Shown: positions 1 to 22,230, counted from the first letter of the whole stretch. The stretch: 63,921 nucleotides of DNA, filler included, from Octopus bimaculoides (GCF_001194135.2; 7 parts of 6 records of this genome joined end to end with filler, not necessarily neighbours in it), one strand, 5' to 3'. Notes: generated from the letters alone by a model not told the origin. Translations and numbers: made by a program.

Positions 1-295
1 CTCTGTCAGACTTATTCTCCATCTTCATCTCTGTCCAACTGCTTCATCTCTCTGTCCCTCTCTCTCTGGGACTCTATACATTTCTGCTGACCATATCTTT
101 CTCTCTGTCAGACTTATTCCCATCTTCTTTCTGCTGACCATAGCTTTCTCTGTCAGACTTATTCTCCATCTTCATCTCTGTCCAACTGCTTCATCTCTCT
201 GTCCCTCTCTCTCTGGGACTCTATGCGTTTCTGCTGACCATAGCTTTCTGTCTGTCAGACTTATTCTTCATCTTCATCTCACTCGACTGGCCCCA
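1..295. repeat. Pyrimidine-rich minisatellite (about 102-bp unit plus a 45-bp deleted unit), runs into a gap
   Basis: Near-identical TCTGTCAGACTTATTC unit starts recur at about 1, 103, 148 and 250. Confidence 0.9.
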
Positions 296-685: not shown

Positions 686-2392
686 GGTACTTGCCCGCAC
701 TTTGTTAGAACGTTTAAATACCTTCATAGTTCCAAATATAGTGTCTGAGTCTCAGTGTGGTTTTCGTTCCTCCAGCGGCACAGCTGATTGTATCTTTACT
801 ATAAGACAATTGTAAGACAAGTGCATTGAACAGAATCTTGCTCTATATTATTGCTTTGTTGATTTGAGCAAAGCATTTGATACTGTTAATCGAAATGCTC
901 TGTGGCTAATTCTAAGAAAAATAGGTTGTCTAGAAAAATTTGTAAGCATGATCAGAACTTTGCATCAAAATATGAAAACTAGAGTTAACTTTGGTGGCAG
1001 GCTCTCTGAATCTTTTGCCGCGGAAAATGGAGTAAAGCAGGGAAACTTTGATGCACCCCACACTCTTTGCAATATACTTTGCTGTTGTGTTGTCACACGC
1101 TTTTCAAAACTCTGAGGAGAGTATTTATATAAAATATCGAAAAACAGGGAATGTTTTTAATCTGACCAAACTGAAATTCAAAGCGAAGGTTTTTACTTCA
1201 CTCATCAAGAAACTTTTATACGCTGACGATTGCGATCTTGTCAGTCATTCTGAAACAGGTCTGCAATCTCTTGTATCTGCATCTGACTCAGCTTCTGATG
1301 ATTTTGGCTTGACCATCAATCTGAAAAAAACAGTTGTAATGCATCAACCTGCATGTGCTGCTGTTTGTAATCCCGCTAAAATTTTTAAGGTTAAGTTACT
1401 TGAAGTTGTCGATTCGTTCATCTACTTTGTACAAAATGATTCTTGATACAGAAATACATCTGCGAATTCAAAAGGCAACAAAAGCATTTGGTGGCTTGGA
1501 GTCACGCGTTTGGTGACAGCAATGTATAAATAAGAATACAAAGCTGGTTCTTTACAAATCATTTGTCTTACCATCCCTGTTGTATTATTGTGAAACATGG
1601 ACTTGTTATGAAAGGCATTTTAAACTGTTAGAACAATTCCACCAAAAATGCCTTCATCGAATTTTAAACATTAAATGGAGTTATTTTACTCCAAACACAG
1701 ATATCCTTGCATCTGCAGGCATATATTCAATTAATGCTATGATTTTGAGAAACCAAATGAGATGGTGTAGCCATATTATTCGAATGGTCGATGAACGCAT
1801 GCCCAAACAGCTGTTTATGGTGAGCTTGCAGAGGGAAACGCTATCGGGTTAAACCTTTAAAAAAGGGTTTAAGGACGGCGGAAGGACTACTATGAAGTCA
1901 CTTGGCATGGATGCAGAGGACATAGAAACCCCTGCTTCGGGAGTGAAAGCGTTTTAAGAGGCCAGGATAACGCATGCAATACTCAAAAGAGATTTAAGGA
2001 AGAATGTTACGATCGAGGTGAATCACAATGACCTTTTTGTGTGCTTAGTTTGTGACAGACTATGCCTTTCTTTTGCTGGGCTCAAATCTCATTTGTGAAC
2101 CCATGGAAAACGAATCTCCACCAATTATTCTGCCTATGTGTCTGTGCACACCTTTAAATGTAGTGTATGCTAGAAGGTTTGCTAATCTAACGAAGGCCTC
2201 AAAAGATATTTTAAGATTCACAAAGATCAGAACTTATCTGCAGCTCTTGGTGGTCCAAATCGGATGTGCAATTTATGTGGGTGTCTCGTCAGAACATTGT
2301 CTGGTTTAAAAAGCCACATCAGATGCCATGATAGTTCTAAGGTGTAGTTACAGGAGGTGGTCAAACTCAGCATAAGGAGTAGACAACCACCA
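686..2392 (+). mobile_element. Decayed RTE-clade non-LTR retrotransposon (RT to 3' end) with C-terminal C2H2 fingers
   Basis: Translated motifs SQCGFR, FVDLSKAFDTVNR, GVKQG, LLYADD (1219-1230), GLTINLKKT, LLYYCETW and MRWCSHIIRM..RMPKQL, broken by stops and frameshifts. An RTE-like short 3' tail follows at 2350-2392. Confidence 0.9.
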
Positions 2393-2394
2393 TA

Positions 2395-2395
2395 T

Positions 2396-2433
<38 letters not shown>

Positions 2434-2478
2434 TTACACATACACACGTANNNNNNNNNNNNNNNNNNNNNNNNNNNN

Positions 2479-2513
<35 letters not shown>

Positions 2514-2612
2514 TTACACATACACACGTACACATGTACACACGCACATATGTATGTATGTATATATATATGTATGTATGCATGTATGTATGTATGTATG
2601 TATGTATGTATA
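2395..2612. repeat. (TA)n/(TATG)n compound microsatellite with duplicated gap flanks
   Basis: Direct reading; the same block occurs on both sides of the 29-N gap. Confidence 0.95.
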
Positions 2613-3379
2613 TGGGTTGTGAAGGTGTGTATATGTATATAATGGCTAAAAAAATGGATCCCAAGACTACAGATGAAACTATTAAATAACATATATTACT
2701 TTGCATATACTGGCTCCACCTGGAATATAATCACCAGCACAAATAAACCCATTTGAAATAATCAGGGACGATTGATTTCTACATTCATCAATTGGAACAA
2801 CAGGAACAGCGGCTTTGAGAAGAACATCGGAACTGGATTCTTGGACTAATAGAAGAAACAAATGAGTTTCGGTTAGTTAGTGTCTTGGGGGTTGATTTTG
2901 GTATTTGAAAATGTAAAATAAACAAATAAATGGACAAACAAATTCATTGAGCATATATTGTTACCAATATATATAAAACTCTGGTTGTTGGCTCATTTGA
3001 TGCATGACGGAGTTTAACAGAGCTGTCCTCATCTGGTATCATGGATACCACATTTACATCGTATAGGTTTTTTAATTTTGTTTTGGCAGAGCATTGAAGA
3101 GCTGTGGGCATTTAAACCCTAAACTACTGCATTACCTGGTCATGACTTTAGATAGGCTGAACAGTGCTTTTGGTACAACGCAATGGCATCTAATTCGATC
3201 ATCTGTATAACACTCGATGCTGAAATTAGGTACTATCTCTTTCAAAAGTTTTCAGATGTAGATTATGACATATCTCGCACATCTTCACTTCAGGAAGTAA
3301 AGTCATTGTTTTTTTTTTTTTGCCTCTCTCTGTTGTTTATCTGCTACACTGTGTTATAATCTTTAGTTTGTTTTCGCTC

Positions 3380-5960: not shown

Positions 5961-7244
<1,284 letters not shown>

Positions 7245-12534: not shown

Positions 12535-12536
12535 TT

Positions 12537-12555
12537 AATAATAATAATAATAATG

Positions 12556-12615
<60 letters not shown>
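12537..12615. repeat. (AAT)n microsatellite
   Basis: Direct reading. Confidence 0.98.
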
Positions 12616-12618
<3 letters not shown>

Positions 12619-14559: not shown

Positions 14560-17400
14560 AATCAGAAAATTGAACGGGTAGTACAGGTTAGAAGGAAGGG
14601 AAAAAATAAACAGTACATGAAGAATTAACGCAAAAGGTGTCTGCATTAAAGGCTAAATTGAAAAGATGCAAAGGTTTCGAACAGAAAAAACTGTACCAAT
14701 CAAATAGAAGGCGTCTTTTTGAGGAAATAGAGGGAGGCCAACACCAAAAACTGATTCCAGATGCGGAAAAAAGTAAAGAATTTTGGGGAGGATCGGGGAA
14801 CAGGCCTGTGAGACATAAAGAAAGTGCAGAGTGGCTAACAAAGGTGGAAAGACAACTTGCAAGACAAAAGGANNNNNNNNNNNNNNNNNNNNNNNNNNNN
14901 NNNNNNNNNNNNNNNNNNNNNNNNNNNNNNAAAACTGTACCAATCAAATAGAAGGCGTCTTTTTGAGGAAATAGAGGGAGGCCAACACCAAAAACTGATT
15001 CCAGATGCGGAAAAAAGTAAAGAATTTTGGGGAGGATTGGGGAACAGGCCTGTGAGACATAAAGAAAGTGCAGAGTGGCTAACAAAGGTGGAAAGACAAC
15101 TTGCAAGACAAAAGGACATCAGAATTAATCTATATACAGTGAGACAGAAGTTAAAAATAATAGCTATTTAGAAAGAACTGAACCCGGATGGAGTACAAAG
15201 CTATTGGCTGAAGAACTTTACAAAGTCGCATGAAAGGATCGCTGCGCATCTAGATGACTGCCTGCAGCAAGATCTCGTCCCTGCCTGGATGACAAGTGGA
15301 TGAACGTTGCTATGTCTCAAGGATCCCTTGAAAGGGAACTTAGCATTAAATTTCAACCTATAACTTGTTTACCACTTATGACCGTTTCTTGCCGGAAGAG
15401 TTATACAACCATCTGGAAAGTAACATTCTACTTCCAGAAGAAAAGAAAGGATGCAAGAAACAAAGTAGAGCAACAAAAGATCACTTATTAGTTGATAAAA
15501 TGATAATTAGAAATTGTAGATGCAGATTGACAGGACTAAATGTTGCAGGACTAGATTACATAAAAACAAATGACATGGTACCACACAGTTGGATAAGTAA
15601 AACAATGAGCATGTTTGGAATAGGAAAAAAACGTGGAGAAAATGCTTAATGTAAGTATGAAACATTGGAATACTAAGTTGATCGGAGGAAAACAAAAACT
15701 CGGAAAAGTGAACATCCGACGTGGAATATTCCAAGGTGATAGCTTATCTCCATTACCAATCGTATTCGCCATGACGCCGCTCACTATGATACTATGGAAA
15801 GTTGAAATAGCTTACAATTTGCGAAAAGGAAATGGTCAGATAAATCATCACCTTTTCATGGATGATATAACGGTTTATGCAAAAAAAAAAAAATTAGAAA
15901 CAGCTTGAAAGTCTTGTAATACTATCCACATTTTTTCAAGTAACGTAGGGATGGACTTTTGGGATAGAAAAGTGTGCTGTTTTGAAAATGAAGATTTGAA
16001 AGAAGCTAGGAAATTGAAAAGTCAAATGGGTAAACAATGAGAGCGGTTGAGAAAGGACAGTGGTATAAGTACTTGGGAATAGTGGAAGCAAGCGAAAAAA
16101 AAAATGAAGAAATGAAATAAATTACCAGCAGGGAGTACAGAAGGAGAAAGAGAACATTATTGCACTCAAAGCTGAATTCAAGCAAATTTATTGATGCAAT
16201 AAATTCAAGAGCAGTACCCTTAATCAGATATGGAGTTGGAATTATGGACTGAACCAAAAACGATATAAAGAAACTTGACAGAAAAACTAGAAATCTGTTG
16301 ACAAGGTATGGAGCCCACCACCTGAAAGCTGATATCAACCAACTACACTTGAGGAGAGACCAGGGTGTAAGAGACTTAACAGTAGTGGAAGAATATGTAC
16401 AGAGGGAAAGAAAAGGCCTAGTAGAATATTTACAGAGTAGCACAGAGAAACTACTAAAGACAGTGAATAAAAAAAAAAACAGATGATCAAGTGCGTAATA
16501 GGAGAAAAGAACAAGAATGAAATAGAAACAGTGCACGTCAGACAGATTAAGGAGAAACCTCTGCATGGTCAGTTTTGGAGAGCCATTAAAAACGTAGGTG
16601 GAACAAAATCCTGAGCTTGGTTAAAAACGGGGCAATTAAAAAAGAAACAGAAAGCCTAATTATAGCAACCCAAAATCAAGCGATAAAAACAAACAACTTA
16701 AGTAAAAATACATATGGAGAGAATGTGTCAGAAAGATGTAGAGCCTGTGGAACTTGGAACGAGATAGTGGCACACATTGTGGAAGAAATCTCCAAGTTGG
16801 CACAGGACGCGAATAAGAGATAGAGGCACGACCAGGTCGTAAAACTTTTAACTGGAAACTTTGCCAGAAATAGGGATTTGAAGCTAGAAACACATGGTAT
16901 AATCATCGGGTTGAAAAGTTTCTGGAGACAGGAAAAATGTAAGATTTTGCGGAACTTTCCTATTTTCTAACTTGTCAGAAGTTGGAAAATAATACACCGG
17001 ACATAACAATTATAGATAGGGAAAAGCGAAGATGCTTACTAATCGACCCATCATGCCGGTTTGATTCCAAGATCGAAAAGAAAGAGGACGAAAAACAAAG
17101 AAAATACAATCTCTTAAAATTTGAAATAGGACGAATAGGAGTGTGAGAACTGCCAATGTCGTGCCTATAATGATTGATGCATTGAGAACAGTAAGCAAAG
17201 ATATAGACAAATGGTTGAAGGAGATTGAAATAGAATACCCTGTAGAACTCCAACAAAAAGTTTGTGACTTAGGGATAGCAAGGATTATCGAGAGGTTTCT
17301 AAGCCTTTGAAAGACTACTGAAAACTTGAAGATACCTAAGGTTACAGGTAGTAAACGGCTACCCATATAAATCCTACAAGGAATAAGAATAATCCTGAGT
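14560..17400 (+). mobile_element. R4/Dong-like RLE non-LTR retrotransposon, 5'-truncated, decayed
   Basis: PDGVQSYWLKNF, QPITCLP, KKGCKKQSRATKDHLLVDK, LDYIKTNDMVPHSWI, RRGIFQGDSLSPL, HHLFMDD, YGAHHLKADI, CCHC knuckle CRACGTWNEIVAHIVEEI, then RLE region to LGIARIIERF. Confidence 0.9.
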
Positions 17401-17799: not shown

Positions 17800-19980
17800 C
17801 TAATACAAGTGTATCAAATAATGGTGTAAATGAAGCTGCAATCAAAAGTGAAAGCCTTTCGCCAGGCTGGTGCCCTGTGGTTGAGCAGCGCAGGCCCGGT
17901 TGTCATTCAGAGACTGCTTATACACAAAGTTAGAGGCAGAGAGGAAGGTGGGATTAGGAGGCAAACCAAACGGTAATTGAATGCTGGATCAGACTTGAAC
18001 CCAGTAGAAGGGGATTCCGATAAAGCATGAAAGCAAAATGGAATGAAATAGGACTCTTCGAGATAAGTAAGCAATGGTTAGCCGACAAGGTAAGAGCAAT
18101 AAGAACAAAAGGGAGGTTAACAGACATGGAAATAGAAGAGATAAAAAGGAAAGTAGAAAGCAGTAATAATACTTCACCTGCAGATAACGTGCCTAGCGAG
18201 GACGGAGAAATGAGTGGCAACAGTGAAGATGTAGAGCAAAGTGTAAATGTAAATGCACTCTCAACAAATGAAGCAGAGGTAATAGGAAGAGCTATATCAC
18301 AAGAATACGATGATGATCAAGGAAACAATGAGGTGAGGATGATGTGCCGATATATTAGAGAAGACCAGGATCAAACATCCCCCAATCTGACGTACACTGA
18401 TCGACGCAAGCTCAAAGCTGAAACCGAAAGGATAGACTCTGTTTTGTTTTTTTTTCCAGACGGGAAATATAACTAAAACTAACAAGATTCTGGGGCTGCA
18501 GCTATGGTTGCTGCAGATAGAGTTGGATACAAAAAAAAAGAGACTAAACAGAGCGTAAAGAACCATACTGGCGTAGACGAATTTGTGAGAAACGAAGTTT
18601 AAATGATATTTAGGACAAGTTGATAGATTGAAAAGAAGGGAATTTCAGAACGAAAGCATAAGAATAAGATTGGAAAGAAAATATAGAATAAGAGATAAAG
18701 GGTATGGTGTGAATTGGTTTCAAAGCTGAATGTCAGAAACATAATTTCGGCAATAAACTCGCGCGCACTCGCAGTAGTTCGGTATAGCGCTGAAATCCTG
18801 AAGTGAGCAGAGAAGGAGCTAAAGGAGTTGGACAGGAAGACAAGAAGGCACCTAACGATGCATGGAGCCCATCATCGTTATCGTAAACATGTTGCCAGCT
18901 TTAAGACAATCGATAAGAGACATTCAACATCTTAGGAAGATTTTGTATGGAAACTGAAGGATGATAAAACGAAGTACAACATTAATTGGTCCATAGTAAG
19001 CTATGCGAAACCATACGATATAATTTCCAGGAGATGCCGTCTCTGCTCCGAGGAATCCCTGTCTATTCTGTGGACTAACGAGAAGATAATTAGAAAAATT
19101 TCTGAACGACTCTCGAGATGCCTACACGCATATAAATGTACATTCGCACAATGCAGTGAGAATAAATTTTGAGTAACCGTTAACTTAATTTACTTTAAGG
19201 TATGGATTACTTTTAACTTCCCCATTCTTATAAACACAAAGTTGATAAATAACTCGCTTTGTAATCATGTGTGCACCAAACCTCCCGTGTGCGTATGCTC
19301 ACATTTTTGCAGATGCTTGTATGAGCGAGTGTACTCGCACCATGCAGCTTACCCGAGGGCGTTTATACAGCCATACCTGTTAACGGTTATTATTGATAGT
19401 TTTCTCGCTGGATTGCGTATTCGTTTCTCTTTTAGTGACCTGTGATTTTATTTTTGATCTTCTATATAAATGAATATATTTCCTCTACAAAACGGAAAGT
19501 TACATTGCGGAACAGTCATTTTAACGAGTTGTATTTATCTATCACCCGACGAGATACATCTGCACCACCGGATGCTCCTGAACCAGTTGTTCAGTGTCCC
19601 ACCCAAGAGGAATCGATGCTAGATGTGTCGAAACAATTGTCGTGATTAATAATAAATTCTCTTATATTCCATCTTCTGTCTTTCATTGAAATTGCAAAAC
19701 TTTGGAATATGAAAACTGCAAAGGTTATGACTATAATAATTAGTGCATTGGGAACAGTCAGCAAAGATATAGACAAATGGTTGAAGGAGATTGTAATAGA
19801 ATGTCTTGAAGAGCTTTTACAGGAAGTTTACCTCTTAGCAACAGAAAAGGTTATCAGGAGGGTTTTAAGCGCTTTAAAGACTATAGAAACCTAGCGGGTA
19901 CCTAAGGTTAGAGGTAGTAACCCGCTACCCACATAAATTCTACCAGGAATAAAACCGAACCTGAGTCAAATTAATAAGAA
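17800..19980 (+). mobile_element. R4/Dong-like element: N-terminal Myb-like region, large internal deletions, Penelope fragment inside, 3' end retained
   Basis: ORF 18027-18476 (MKAKWNEIGLFEISKQWLADKVRAIRTKGRL) resembles the N-terminal Myb-like domain; 18720-18875 encodes ISAINSRALAVVRY...LTMHGAHH; 19700-19980 matches the 3' end at 17150-17400. Confidence 0.75.
18876..19690 (+). mobile_element. Penelope-like element 3' fragment (GIY-YIG C-terminus and terminal repeat)
   Basis: RYRKHVASFK, FVWKLKDDKTKYNINWSIVSYAKPYDIISRRCRLCSEESLSIL, SRCLHAYK. Hammerhead-like 3' half GAAAC-AATT-GTC at 19630-19641. Confidence 0.75.
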
Positions 19981-20012
19981 TAATAATCATAATAATAATA
20001 ATAATAATAATA

Positions 20013-20726: not shown

Positions 20727-20761
<35 letters not shown>

Positions 20762-20837
20762 CAACAGCAACAACAACAACAATAACAACAACAATAATAA
20801 TAATAATAATAATAACAACAACAACAACAACAACAAC

Positions 20838-20899
<62 letters not shown>

Positions 20900-20905
20900 T
20901 AATAG
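20727..20905. repeat. (AAT)n/(AAC)n compound trinucleotide microsatellite
   Basis: Direct reading; explains the poly-I/T ORF calls. Confidence 0.98.
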
Positions 20906-20989: not shown

Positions 20990-22230
20990 TACAAAGTGTT
21001 TGACACGATCATCTCATGGATGATCTGAAATTACATGCAAAAGATAAGGATCTGAAAGGGCTACTGTGAAAAAATTCAGCGATGACATAAATGTGGGATT
21101 TAGCCTTGACAAAAATGCAAAATATTCGTTCAAACGTGGTAAACTGACAGCTAATGCAACGACCCAACTTGATCATGATGCATTTGTCAAGGACCTGGAT
21201 CAAGAAGGTTTTATAAGTACTTTGGGATACATGAAGGAAAAGGGATTCAACACAGATCGATGAAAGAGAAAATCAGGAAAGTGCATTATAGCAAGAGAAT
21301 GGTCCTGAATACTGAGCTGAATAGAATTACAGCTATAAACTCCCTGGCGGTACCAGTTGTCCAGTATGGCCTTAATGTCATCAATTGGAATCTGAATGAA
21401 AGCCAGCGTATGGACATAAAGACCAGAAAACTGCTGACACTACACAGGATGCACCACCCAAAAGCAGACGTCTACAGTCTCTATCTACCGCGAAAGGAAA
21501 GCGGTAGAGTCCTAAACCAATTTGAAACGTCCTATAAAAAGACTACGATAGGACTTCAAGTGTATATCCAAAGTAAGACCGACTGGATGATACAATTGGT
21601 ACGGAAACACGAACAGAGGAACAAATTGCACTCAATCTTAAAGGAGACATATAAATACAGAGAGTTTCATCTCCCTGATTATGATGATATTAAGGAGGAC
21701 ACATGACCCACTAAGGCAGCAAAAAAGTGTAAAACAAAAGCCAAACAAGCAAGCTCGAAGGAAATATCAAGACTGTAGCAAGAAAAACCAGTGTATACTT
21801 GCAATGGAACGTATGCCGTCACTATGATATCCCACACCCTGAAAGCTAGTATGAACAACACCCAGAGCCAATTACCTAGTGAGAGAATGTTACCATCCTA
21901 GACAAGCAAATAAATGCTAAACAACTAGACATCGTCATCAAAGACAAAAAACATGCCTGTTAATTGAAAGGAATTTGAAAAACTATCGAAATGTAAGGAT
22001 CTTGAGATTGAGATATGGATGTGGCAATTGTATGTGCCCTAGGAATGATTAAGAAAGGTAGTGACAAATTTTTTGGTCAGATCTCTGGGAAACCAACAAT
22101 CTATAAAATCCAAAAAATAATGTTGACATCAACCGCCCACATTCTCAGGAAGTTTCCCTCCGTCTAGTGTATACGTGTTTTAGGTTTCTGGTTGAGACCC
22201 GGCCGGAAGATGAAATAAAATGCAAATCAA
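20990..22230 (+). mobile_element. R4/Dong-like RLE retrotransposon, second subfamily, 5'-truncated
   Basis: LMDDLKLHAK, VKKFSDDINVGFSLDKNAK, RITAINSLAVPVVQYG, MHHPKADVYSLYLPRKESGR, RLE region and IQKIMLTSTAHILRK. Confidence 0.85.

What the first reader, a model, noticed from the sequence alone, without database searches (positions are those of the whole stretch)
2036..2347. RTE retrotransposon ORF ends in an array of three tandem C2H2 zinc fingers
Seen: one reading frame that the ORF track misses because of three stops reads FVCLVCDRLCLSFAGLKSHL*TH - linker - FKCSVC*KVC*SNEGLKRYFKIH - linker - MCNLCGCLVRTLSGLKSHIRCH-DSSKV*. All three fit C-x2-C-x12-H-x3-H (the second has Y at the first His). 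The array lies between the RT/thumb region and the RTE 3' tail, so it belongs to the element. Known: some RTE elements carry one C-terminal C2H2-like motif, and octopus genomes have a very large C2H2 gene expansion. Inference: this is an RTE lineage with an amplified nucleic-acid-binding module. It could guide targeting or scatter finger modules through the genome.
Basis: partly seen in the sequence, partly recalled or inferred. Interest (0 to 1): 0.72.

Follow-up and report, generated by a model that had tools for sequence, protein, structure and literature searches.

The report
Three-finger tail of an RTE-type LINE
The three zinc fingers are real and form the normal end of the protein of a dead jumping gene (an RTE-type LINE); living relatives keep the same three fingers, which arose by duplication of one ancestral finger, so this is an ordinary decayed copy of a family already reported in octopus.

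Summary
Observation confirmed.

It is the 3' end of one decayed non-LTR retrotransposon ORF (687-2347, cut at the 5' side by an N run). A 48-nt 3' UTR with a small hairpin and a (TA)n/(TATG)n tail follow.

- **Conserved, not captured.** About 25 intact relatives (45-51% identical, full length 1123-1199 aa, endonuclease-RT-three fingers) carry the same array, and all 12 zinc ligands are invariant.
- **Derived state.** In a tree built without the fingers, the three-finger proteins and the window form one clade inside a large one-finger group. The fingers resemble each other and the single ancestral finger more than control C2H2 fingers, which points to internal duplication.
- **RTE assignment is indirect.** It rests on CFDP2-like endonuclease hits, a single ORF, and a short UTR with a microsatellite tail.
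- **Prior report.** An octopus RTE element with a C2H2 domain (RTE-2_OV) was published in 2022.
- **Likely role (inferred).** The fingers look like a basic RNA/ssDNA-binding or chaperone module, not a sequence-reading DNA array: linkers are 6-21 aa with no TGEKP, and helix contact residues are small and invariant.

Low to moderate interest.

The parts
687..1428 (+). Decayed reverse-transcriptase domain, starting mid-RT. It aligns from residue 615 of the 1179-aa relative P0122. The frame shifts near 1050. Everything upstream is lost in the N run 296-685.
   Evidence: Pfam RVT_1 E=4e-21. tblastn with P0122, P0142, P0175, P0181 and P0057 gives three collinear pieces in three frames. Three-frame translation.
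1442..2035 (+). Thumb and C-terminal helical segment of the same ORF (motifs LLYxxETW, RFHQKCLRxIL, YGEL..GKR, FE..R....KR..RK). It has further frameshifts around 1816-1860, internal stops, and a deletion of about 12 aa around the DR..WR motif.
   Evidence: tblastn piece 1442-2329 against P0122 residues 872-1176. Alignment A1. Translations.
2036..2347 (+). The reported segment: three classical C2H2 fingers (F1 2042-2104, F2 2159-2221, F3 2267-2329). Linkers are 18 and 15 aa. Stops lie at 2096, 2171 and 2183, His->Tyr at 2207, and the ORF stop at 2345-2347.
   Evidence: translation. (E=1e-28 against the intact tail). (all 12 zinc ligands invariant in 18 intact relatives and in register with the window). 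(linker lengths).
2348..2398 (+). Short 3' UTR. Positions 2356-2391 hold a small hairpin motif (GGTGG-TC..CTC-loop-GAG..GAC..CCACC) that the family shares.
   Evidence: The same motif lies directly upstream of the microsatellite in L001, L003, L008, L037, L038, L039 and L040. RNAalifold on 8 sequences predicts 9 pairs, 4 of them with compensatory changes.
2399..2620 (+). Microsatellite 3' tail of the element: (TA)n at 2399-2430 and 2479-2510, an assembly gap at 2451-2478, CA-rich bases, then (TATG)n at 2549-2611.
   Evidence: Tandem Repeats Finder. (TATG)n follows the ORF in every three-finger relative with 3' flank, L002-L009.

Best explanation
**What it is (shown).** Window 687-2620 is one dead copy of an APE-type non-LTR retrotransposon of the RTE group. 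It is either 5'-truncated or interrupted by an assembly gap.

Its single ORF ends in three classical C2H2 (beta-beta-alpha) zinc fingers. These are a normal, selectively maintained part of the protein in a distinct and widespread clade. Intact members have the order endonuclease, RT, thumb, basic helix (KR..RK), then three fingers, and are 1123-1199 aa long.

**How the array arose (shown).** The wider group ends in one finger of the same signature (C-x2-C-x-R/K-x-C/F-x-S/A-x-x-G-L-x-S-H-x-R-x-H). The three-finger state arose once by internal duplication of that finger. It was later reduced to two or one finger in a few lines.

**What the fingers do (inferred, about 45% for this specific role).** The highly basic tail with three loosely tethered fingers is a nucleic-acid-binding or chaperone module. 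It would hold the element's own RNA and/or the single-stranded target DNA during target-primed reverse transcription. These elements have no ORF1 protein, so the tail would supply the ORF1-like function, as the C-terminal two-finger protein C2-L1Tc does in the trypanosome LINE L1Tc.

**State of this copy (shown).** The window copy is non-functional: three stops and one lost zinc ligand in the fingers, and several frameshifts upstream.
For: **Identity**
- RVT_1 E=4e-21.
- 573 homologues; the best are E=1e-175 with 99-100% coverage including the tail.
- The tail alone scores E=1e-28.
- There is only one copy in the window.

**Conservation**
- 18 intact tails aligned with the window show all Cys and His ligands invariant.
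- Pfam zf-C2H2, zf-met and zf-C2H2_jaz pass their gathering scores in intact relatives.
- The AlphaFold2 model gives three beta-beta-alpha units at pLDDT about 87-92, with floppy linkers (59-76) and pTM 0.39. Foldseek matches classical C2H2 arrays.

**Derived state and duplication**
- Finger counts among hits with long tails are 1 (80), 3 (43), 2 (14) and 0 (5).
- In an NJ tree built without the fingers, the window and all three-finger proteins fall in one clade nested among one-finger lineages.
- F1, F2 and F3 against each other and against the single finger show 0.22-0.37 identity (BLOSUM62 12-31). Against 107 control fingers the values are 0.17-0.23 (4-11).

**RTE group**
- All NCBI-named hits to the endonuclease domain are 'craniofacial development protein 2-like'. 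CFDP2/p97Bcnt carries an RTE-1-derived endonuclease (PMC12129022; the equivalence of the two names is my own knowledge).
- The full-length contig L001 has one 1179-aa ORF and no ORF1.
- The 3' UTR is short and followed by simple repeats, as defined for the RTE clade (PMC1291365).
- Octopus RTE-2_OV has a 1109-aa ORF with EN, RT and C2H2, a microsatellite right after the ORF, and an RTE placement by phylogeny (PMC9115989).

**Mechanism**
- Linkers are 6-21 aa (median 16) and none is TGEKP-like.
- Helix positions -1/+2/+3/+6 are S/A/G/S, S/G/G/R and S/A/G/S. They are nearly invariant across 20 lineages and almost identical between fingers.
- The tail's net charge has a median of +12.5 over 128 aa.
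- C2-L1Tc has two C2H2 fingers flanked by basic stretches, prefers RNA and single strands, and has chaperone activity (PMC2805920).
Against: - No RT phylogeny with reference RTE, RTE-X, Proto2, CR1 or L2 sequences could be run. The RTE assignment is therefore indirect and the sub-clade is unresolved.
- The RTE-2_OV sequence could not be retrieved. Its relation to this copy and its finger number are unknown.
- Nothing here measures binding. The chaperone or RNA-binding role rests on analogy and on residue patterns.
- In zebrafish L2 elements the 3' stem-loop is bound by a region between EN and RT, not by the C-terminus (PMC4176376). The family's 3' hairpin also occurs in one-finger relatives. 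Hairpin recognition therefore does not explain the extra fingers.
- The NJ tree has no bootstrap support and was rooted at midpoint.
Confidence: 0.8

Rival explanations
1. The fingers are a target-site module. They bind genomic DNA, for example (TATG)n/(CATA)n microsatellites that match the element's tail, and steer the endonuclease and priming there. This would parallel the 1-3 N-terminal fingers of R2 elements, which bind rDNA target DNA.
For: Every three-finger relative with 3' flank ends in (TATG)n, while two one-finger relatives end in (AAT)n or (TA)n. The three fingers have near-identical contact residues, which would suit a tandemly repeated ligand. Foldseek's best matches are DNA-bound C2H2 arrays. 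Variation in R2 finger number and its DNA-binding role are my own knowledge.
Against: Contact positions -1/+2/+3/+6 are Ser/Ala/Gly, which is unlike base-reading fingers. Linkers are long, variable and never TGEKP-like. Only two one-finger tails were seen, so the correlation between tail type and finger number is anecdotal. No empty site or 5' junction is available in the window, so target preference is untested.
Confidence: 0.25
2. The fingers serve protein-level roles rather than nucleic-acid binding. Examples are intramolecular docking on the RT/thumb, oligomerisation, nuclear import, or recruitment of a host factor.
For: Invariant small helix residues and a strongly conserved G-L-K-S-H face could be a protein interface. 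C2H2 fingers are known protein-binding modules; Foldseek also matched an IKZF2 finger-CRBN complex.
Against: pTM of 0.39 and low-confidence linkers give no sign of a fixed arrangement. The strong positive charge (median +12.5) and the basic KR..RK helix just upstream fit polyanion binding better. The closest experimental analogue binds nucleic acids.
Confidence: 0.1
3. One-off capture or juxtaposition: the finger segment is a piece of a host C2H2 gene, or a chance pattern, lying next to a LINE fragment.
For: Pfam finger scores on the window copy are below threshold.
Against: The segment shares its frame with the thumb and is collinear with dozens of intact relatives from unrelated samples. The family's own 3' UTR and tail follow it. 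The fingers are closer to the element's ancestral finger than to control fingers.
Confidence: 0.02

Closest known systems
RTE-2_OV, the RTE-clade LINE of Octopus vulgaris (Petrosino et al. 2022, PMC9115989)
   Same: One large ORF (1109 aa) with endonuclease, RT and a terminal C2H2 zinc-finger domain. A microsatellite starts right after the ORF. Its authors placed it in the RTE clade by RT phylogeny. The ORF size lies close to the 1123-1199-aa three-finger relatives found here.
   Different: The sequence was not retrievable, so family identity and finger number are unknown. The paper's text swaps the N- and C-terminal positions of the domains and gives no finger count. The window copy is dead and lacks its 5' half.
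Classical RTE-clade elements (C. elegans RTE-1, Bov-B, Rex3, SR3)
   Same: A single ORF with an N-terminal APE endonuclease followed by RT, no gag-like ORF1, and a very short 3' UTR followed by simple AT-rich repeats (PMC1291365; window and relatives). The endonuclease is CFDP2-like.
   Different: Published descriptions call a C2H2 finger 'relatively rare in RTE elements' (PMC9115989). This clade has three.
One-finger relatives of the same superfamily (hits from Branchiostoma, Oryzias, Cherax, Malaclemys and corals; e.g. P0057, P0063, P0088, P0095)
   Same: 41-44% identity over RT and thumb. The same FE..R....KR..RK helix, followed by one finger of the same G-L-x-S-H signature at the position of F1. 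The same 3' hairpin motif.
   Different: They are about 937-966 aa long and end after the first finger. The tails seen were (AAT)n, (TA)n or none, rather than (TATG)n.
C2-L1Tc, the C-terminal protein of the Trypanosoma cruzi LINE L1Tc (ingi clade)
   Same: C2H2 fingers at the extreme C-terminus of an APE-type LINE, flanked by basic stretches. It has been shown to bind RNA and single strands preferentially and to act as a nucleic-acid chaperone (PMC2805920). It is the best functional model.
   Different: It has two fingers rather than three. It belongs to a different clade that also carries RNase H (my own knowledge). No sequence relationship was tested.
R2 elements with 1-3 N-terminal C2H2 fingers
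   Same: Finger number varies from 1 to 3 between lineages of one LINE group (my own knowledge). The nearest solved LINE structures are L1 ORF2p and R2.
   Different: In R2 the fingers are N-terminal, sit next to a Myb domain, bind a specific rDNA target, and work with a restriction-like endonuclease. Here the fingers are C-terminal in an APE-type element.

Membership tests
RTE clade/group of non-LTR retrotransposons | The RT domain groups with reference RTE elements (RTE-1, Bov-B, Rex3, JAM1, SR2/3) in a phylogeny of all LINE clades. | not testable with these tools
   No reference LINE sequences (Repbase, Dfam, GenBank by accession) can be fetched. Indirect support: the octopus RTE-2_OV, with the same architecture, was placed in RTE by such a tree (PMC9115989). 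A turtle protein (P0112, Malaclemys) is among the one-finger relatives, and turtle and crocodilian Repbase 'RTE' entries were in that paper's RTE reference set.
RTE clade/group of non-LTR retrotransposons | An APE-type endonuclease related to that of RTE-1/Bov-B. | tested here: met
   Tested in relatives only, because the window copy lacks this part. For the APE of P0175, all NCBI-named hits among the best 120 are 'craniofacial development protein 2-like' at about 50-57% identity. CFDP2/p97Bcnt carries an RTE-1-derived endonuclease (PMC12129022). This is a name-based, indirect test.
RTE clade/group of non-LTR retrotransposons | One large ORF with APE then RT, no gag-like ORF1, and no RNase H. 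| tested here: met
   P0122, P0142, P0175 and P0181 show Exo_endo_phos, then RVT_1, then fingers, with no RNase H hit. Contig L001 has 613 nt upstream of the 1179-aa ORF, holding only mechanical ORFs of 71 aa or less. This cannot be tested on the truncated window copy.
RTE clade/group of non-LTR retrotransposons | An unusually short 3' UTR ending in short AT-rich tandem repeats rather than poly(A) (PMC1291365). | tested here: met
   The window has a 48-51 nt UTR, then (TA)n and (TATG)n. L002-L009 have a 20-50 nt UTR, then (TATG)n.
Classical C2H2 zinc finger (Pfam zf-C2H2, PF00096) | C-x2-4-C-x12-H-x3-5-H spacing with the hydrophobic core positions. | tested here: met
   All three units fit the spacing. 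F2 has lost its first His (Tyr). In 20 relatives the Phe position is Cys or Leu and the +4 position is Leu, Tyr or Phe.
Classical C2H2 zinc finger (Pfam zf-C2H2, PF00096) | The profile score reaches Pfam's gathering threshold. | tested here: inconclusive
   The window copy scores 15.1 bits against a threshold of 25.2 and so is not met. This is as expected with three stops and a lost ligand. Intact relatives meet it: P0122 40.9, P0175 28.0, P0169 29.6 bits.
Classical C2H2 zinc finger (Pfam zf-C2H2, PF00096) | A beta-beta-alpha fold. | tested here: met
   The AlphaFold2 model of the P0001 tail gives a hairpin plus helix for each finger at pLDDT about 87-92. Foldseek probability against solved C2H2 arrays is 0.9-1.0. 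This is a prediction, not a solved structure.
Tandem DNA-reading poly-zinc-finger arrays (Zif268/KZNF type) | Conserved 7-residue TGEKP-like linkers and variable base-contact residues at -1, +2, +3 and +6. | tested here: not met
   Linkers are 6-21 aa and 0 of 20 proteins have a TGEKP-like linker. Contact positions are near-invariant Ser/Ala/Gly.

The most novel reading that the evidence does not exclude
Growth from one to three near-identical fingers is an adaptive innovation of one RTE sub-clade, tied to its (TATG)n tail. Each loosely tethered finger would grip one repeat unit of the element's own 3' tail RNA, or of the matching genomic microsatellite. The RT would then be locked onto a repeat-primed target. 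This would give an ORF1-less LINE both cis-preference and microsatellite targeting. It would be a C-terminal counterpart of the variation in R2 N-terminal finger number.
Probability: 0.12. Interest if true: 0.5.

Novelty: new member of a known kind. Interest (0 to 1): 0.25.

Why it matters
For annotation, the segment should be masked as LINE sequence and not called as a C2H2 gene fragment. Every 5'-truncated copy of this family leaves finger-coding DNA behind, which can inflate zinc-finger counts in genomes rich in such elements.

For LINE biology, RTE-type elements have no ORF1 protein. How they bind their RNA, and why they end in microsatellites, is poorly understood. A clade that tripled its terminal finger, next to sister lineages with one or two fingers and a shared 3' hairpin, offers a natural series for testing what that tail does.

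The point itself is modest. A C2H2 domain in an octopus RTE is already published, and the copy here is dead.

Tried and rejected
1. **Fetching RTE-2_OV.** I tried to retrieve the sequence from the paper's supplements for a direct comparison. The transcriptome file is cut and transcript comp36575 is not in the stored part.
2. **Metagenome scan.** It worked with 6 closer rows. Of the 33 loci, only L004-L009 are true relatives. I left L010-L036 aside as generic C2H2 proteins and used them only as control fingers.
3. **Profile search of 1.84 billion representatives**. The top of the list is dominated by giant poly-ZNF proteins that score by summing 10-44 stretches. It was useful only for counting single-stretch full tails, about 45 of the best 150.
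4. **Exact look-up of a window ORF**, to identify the source organism. Nothing is on record. The octopus origin is therefore unverified.
5. **Rfam on the window.** No family matched.
6. **Literature searches** for RTE plus C2H2 or zinc finger. Only the octopus paper mentions such a domain. None describes three fingers. Repbase and Dfam could not be consulted.
7. **Hairpin recognition as the reason for extra fingers.** Rejected as the main idea, because one-finger relatives have the same hairpin.
8. **Host-ZNF origin and chance.** Both rejected.
9. **PDB sequence search**. No RTE-type structure exists; the nearest are L1 ORF2p and R2.

Full report
**1. The observation**

It contains three units of C-x2-C-x12-H-x3-H:
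- F1 at 2042-2104
- F2 at 2159-2221
- F3 at 2267-2329

The linkers between them are 18 and 15 residues. In-frame stops lie at 2096 (TGA), 2171 (TAG) and 2183 (TAA). F2 has Tyr instead of its first His (TAT at 2207). The terminal stop is at 2345-2347.

Intact relatives read Arg, Gln/Asn, Lys and His at the four damaged codons. Three of the four changes are C-to-T transitions, and one of those (CGA to TGA) is at a CpG. This is what a decaying pseudogene looks like (read directly).

**2. What surrounds it**

Upstream, 687-2035 is a reverse transcriptase plus thumb region read through several frameshifts, near 1050, 1430-1445 and 1816-1860. Pfam RVT_1 scores E=4e-21.

The sequence starts mid-RT, directly after an N run (296-685). 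tblastn with full-length relatives shows that it begins at about residue 615 of 1179. It also shows no second copy in the window.

Downstream there is a 48-nt 3' UTR. It is followed by (TA)n, an assembly gap, more (TA)n, and then (TATG)n up to about 2611.

**3. Relatives**

A search with the 553-aa conceptual protein found 573 homologues. The closest 25 or so are intact ORFs, 45-51% identical, covering 99-100% of the query including the tail. They all end in the same three fingers.

Cluster members include full-length ORFs of 1123-1199 aa. Their architecture is Exo_endo_phos, then RVT_1, then three C2H2 fingers. Pfam zf-C2H2, and in some of them zf-met or zf-C2H2_jaz, score above their gathering thresholds.

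In an alignment of the window tail with 18 intact tails, all twelve zinc ligands are invariant and in register with the window. The tail alone matches P0122 at E=1e-28.

A metagenome scan added six more loci with the same tail. A profile search of 1.84 billion cluster representatives returned about 45 single-stretch full tails among the best 150. The rest of that list were giant poly-ZNF proteins that score by summation.

The segment is therefore neither chance nor a one-off capture.

**4. One finger became three**

Most of the 120 best hits end in a single finger of the type C-P-x-C-x-R-x-F/C-x-A/S-x-x-G-L-x-S-H-x-R-x-H. It sits just after a conserved FE..R....KR..RK helix. These hits include named proteins from amphioxus, medaka, crayfish, a turtle and corals.

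Counting fingers in tails longer than 300 aa gives 80 proteins with one finger, 43 with three, 14 with two and 5 with none.

I built a neighbour-joining tree from RT plus thumb with the fingers cut off (94 sequences). It puts the window and every three-finger protein in one clade. That clade also holds three two-finger proteins and one one-finger protein. Its sister is a small variant group, and all other lineages have one finger. The tree has no bootstrap values and is midpoint-rooted, so it is indicative only.

At the 19 non-ligand positions, F1, F2 and F3 compared with each other and with the single finger show 0.22-0.37 identity (BLOSUM62 12-31). Compared with 107 control C2H2 fingers taken from unrelated loci, the values are 0.17-0.23 (4-11).

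This supports internal duplication of the element's own finger. It gives no support to a link with host zinc-finger genes.

**5. Is it an RTE?**

A direct RT phylogeny against reference clades could not be run, because no reference sequences can be fetched. The indirect tests all agree:
- All NCBI-named hits to the endonuclease domain of a full-length relative are 'craniofacial development protein 2-like'. [quoted passage not shown]
- The full-length contig L001 holds one 1179-aa ORF, with no ORF1 and no RNase H.
- The 3' UTR is very short and is followed by simple repeats, in the window and in L002-L009. This is the feature given as characteristic of the RTE clade (PMC1291365).
- Petrosino et al. 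2022 describe RTE-2_OV of Octopus vulgaris. [quoted passage not shown] Phylogeny placed it in the RTE clade (PMC9115989).

I could not retrieve that sequence. Whether the window copy belongs to the same family, and how many fingers RTE-2_OV has, therefore remain open. I also could not verify that the window comes from an octopus.

**6. The 3' end**

Just upstream of the microsatellite, the window (2356-2391) shares a motif with three-finger relatives (L001, L003, L008). The same motif occurs in a two-finger relative (L040) and in one-finger relatives (L037, L038, L039).

RNAalifold on these eight sequences predicts a small hairpin of 9 pairs, 4 of which show compensatory changes. An earlier run with four sequences showed none.

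All three-finger loci with flank end in (TATG)n. Two one-finger loci end in (AAT)n and (TA)n, and one shows no repeat.

So the hairpin is a property of the whole superfamily and does not explain the extra fingers. The link between tail type and finger number rests on too few one-finger loci to count as evidence.

**7. How the fingers most likely work (inference)**

An AlphaFold2 model of an intact tail shows a long basic helix followed by three beta-beta-alpha fingers. The fingers have pLDDT about 87-92, the linkers 59-76, and pTM is 0.39, so the fingers behave like beads on a string. Foldseek matches classical C2H2 arrays and nothing more specific.

In 20 three-finger relatives:
- Linkers are 6-21 residues (median 16), and none is TGEKP-like.
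- The helix positions that read bases in DNA-binding fingers (-1, +2, +3, +6) are S/A/G/S, S/G/G/R and S/A/G/S. They are almost invariant across lineages and almost the same in all three fingers.
- The tail carries a median net charge of +12.5 over 128 residues.

This pattern does not fit a sequence-reading DNA array. It fits backbone-directed binding of RNA or single-stranded DNA.

The best experimental analogue is C2-L1Tc. It has two C-terminal C2H2 fingers flanked by basic stretches, prefers RNA and single strands, and acts as a nucleic-acid chaperone (PMC2805920).

Because these elements lack ORF1, I take a built-in RNA-binding or chaperone module as the most likely role (about 45%). Target-DNA or microsatellite binding comes second (about 25%). 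A protein-interaction role comes third (about 10%). None of these was tested.

**8. Comparison and novelty**

The copy is a dead member of a family type already reported in octopus. The explicit three-finger count, its single origin from a one-finger ancestor, and the secondary losses did not appear in the open literature I could search. Repbase and Dfam consensus sequences very probably already contain such tails, and I could not check them.

I therefore file it as a new member of a known kind, of low to moderate interest. The practical lesson is that truncated copies of this family scatter finger-coding DNA that should be masked as LINE sequence.

**9. Verdict**

- The functional speculation is untested, and the contact-residue pattern argues against classical DNA targeting.
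- No link to host C2H2 genes was found.

Noticed in passing
window 2356-2391; L001 4176-4210; L003 4768-4805; L008; L037-L040 just after the ORF stops: A small 3'-terminal hairpin (GATGG-TC, a variable covarying inner stem, GAC, CCATC) lies directly before the microsatellite tail. One-, two- and three-finger relatives all share it. 4 of 9 predicted pairs show compensatory changes in 8 sequences. It is probably the RT recognition signal of this superfamily.
   Followed up: partly
proteins P0027, P0047, P0100, P0102, P0107 (relatives, not in the window): A sister subgroup keeps the first and last fingers. In place of the middle finger it has one to three Cys-rich 'HDV..C.C..C' repeats of unknown fold.
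   Followed up: no
proteins P0005 and P0131 (database hits): Two fragments of this animal-type LINE are deposited as proteins of bacterial MAGs (Nitrosomonadaceae, Anaerolineales). This is most likely eukaryotic contamination of the bins.
   Followed up: no
window 15365-15908 (+), perhaps extending to 21706: A second, unrelated reverse-transcriptase fragment (RVT_1 at 29.6 bits, FMDD box) is present. Neighbouring ORFs at 15365-15649, 18027-18476 and 21260-21706 may belong to the same decayed retroelement.
   Followed up: partly
window 6167-6869 (-): To my eye, the ORF 6591-6869 (...FVPRLAEQKEHRLEIRQDLCQRAADEPSFSSRIITGDES) reads like the N-terminal part of a mariner-type transposase. Pfam gave no hit.
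   Followed up: partly
window 81-275: A tandem repeat of about 45 nt, 4 copies, 68% matches, sits at the very start of the piece, before the N run that cuts the LINE.
   Followed up: no
window 1900-1960 (alignment A1 columns 17-28): Compared with all intact relatives, the window copy lacks about 12 residues around the conserved DR..WR motif upstream of the fingers.
   Followed up: no
window 12536-12616, 19972-20012, 20727-20904: Long (TAA)n/(AAT)n microsatellites, up to 59 units. (AAT)n is also the tail of one one-finger relative (L038). No LINE remnant was found next to them.
   Followed up: no
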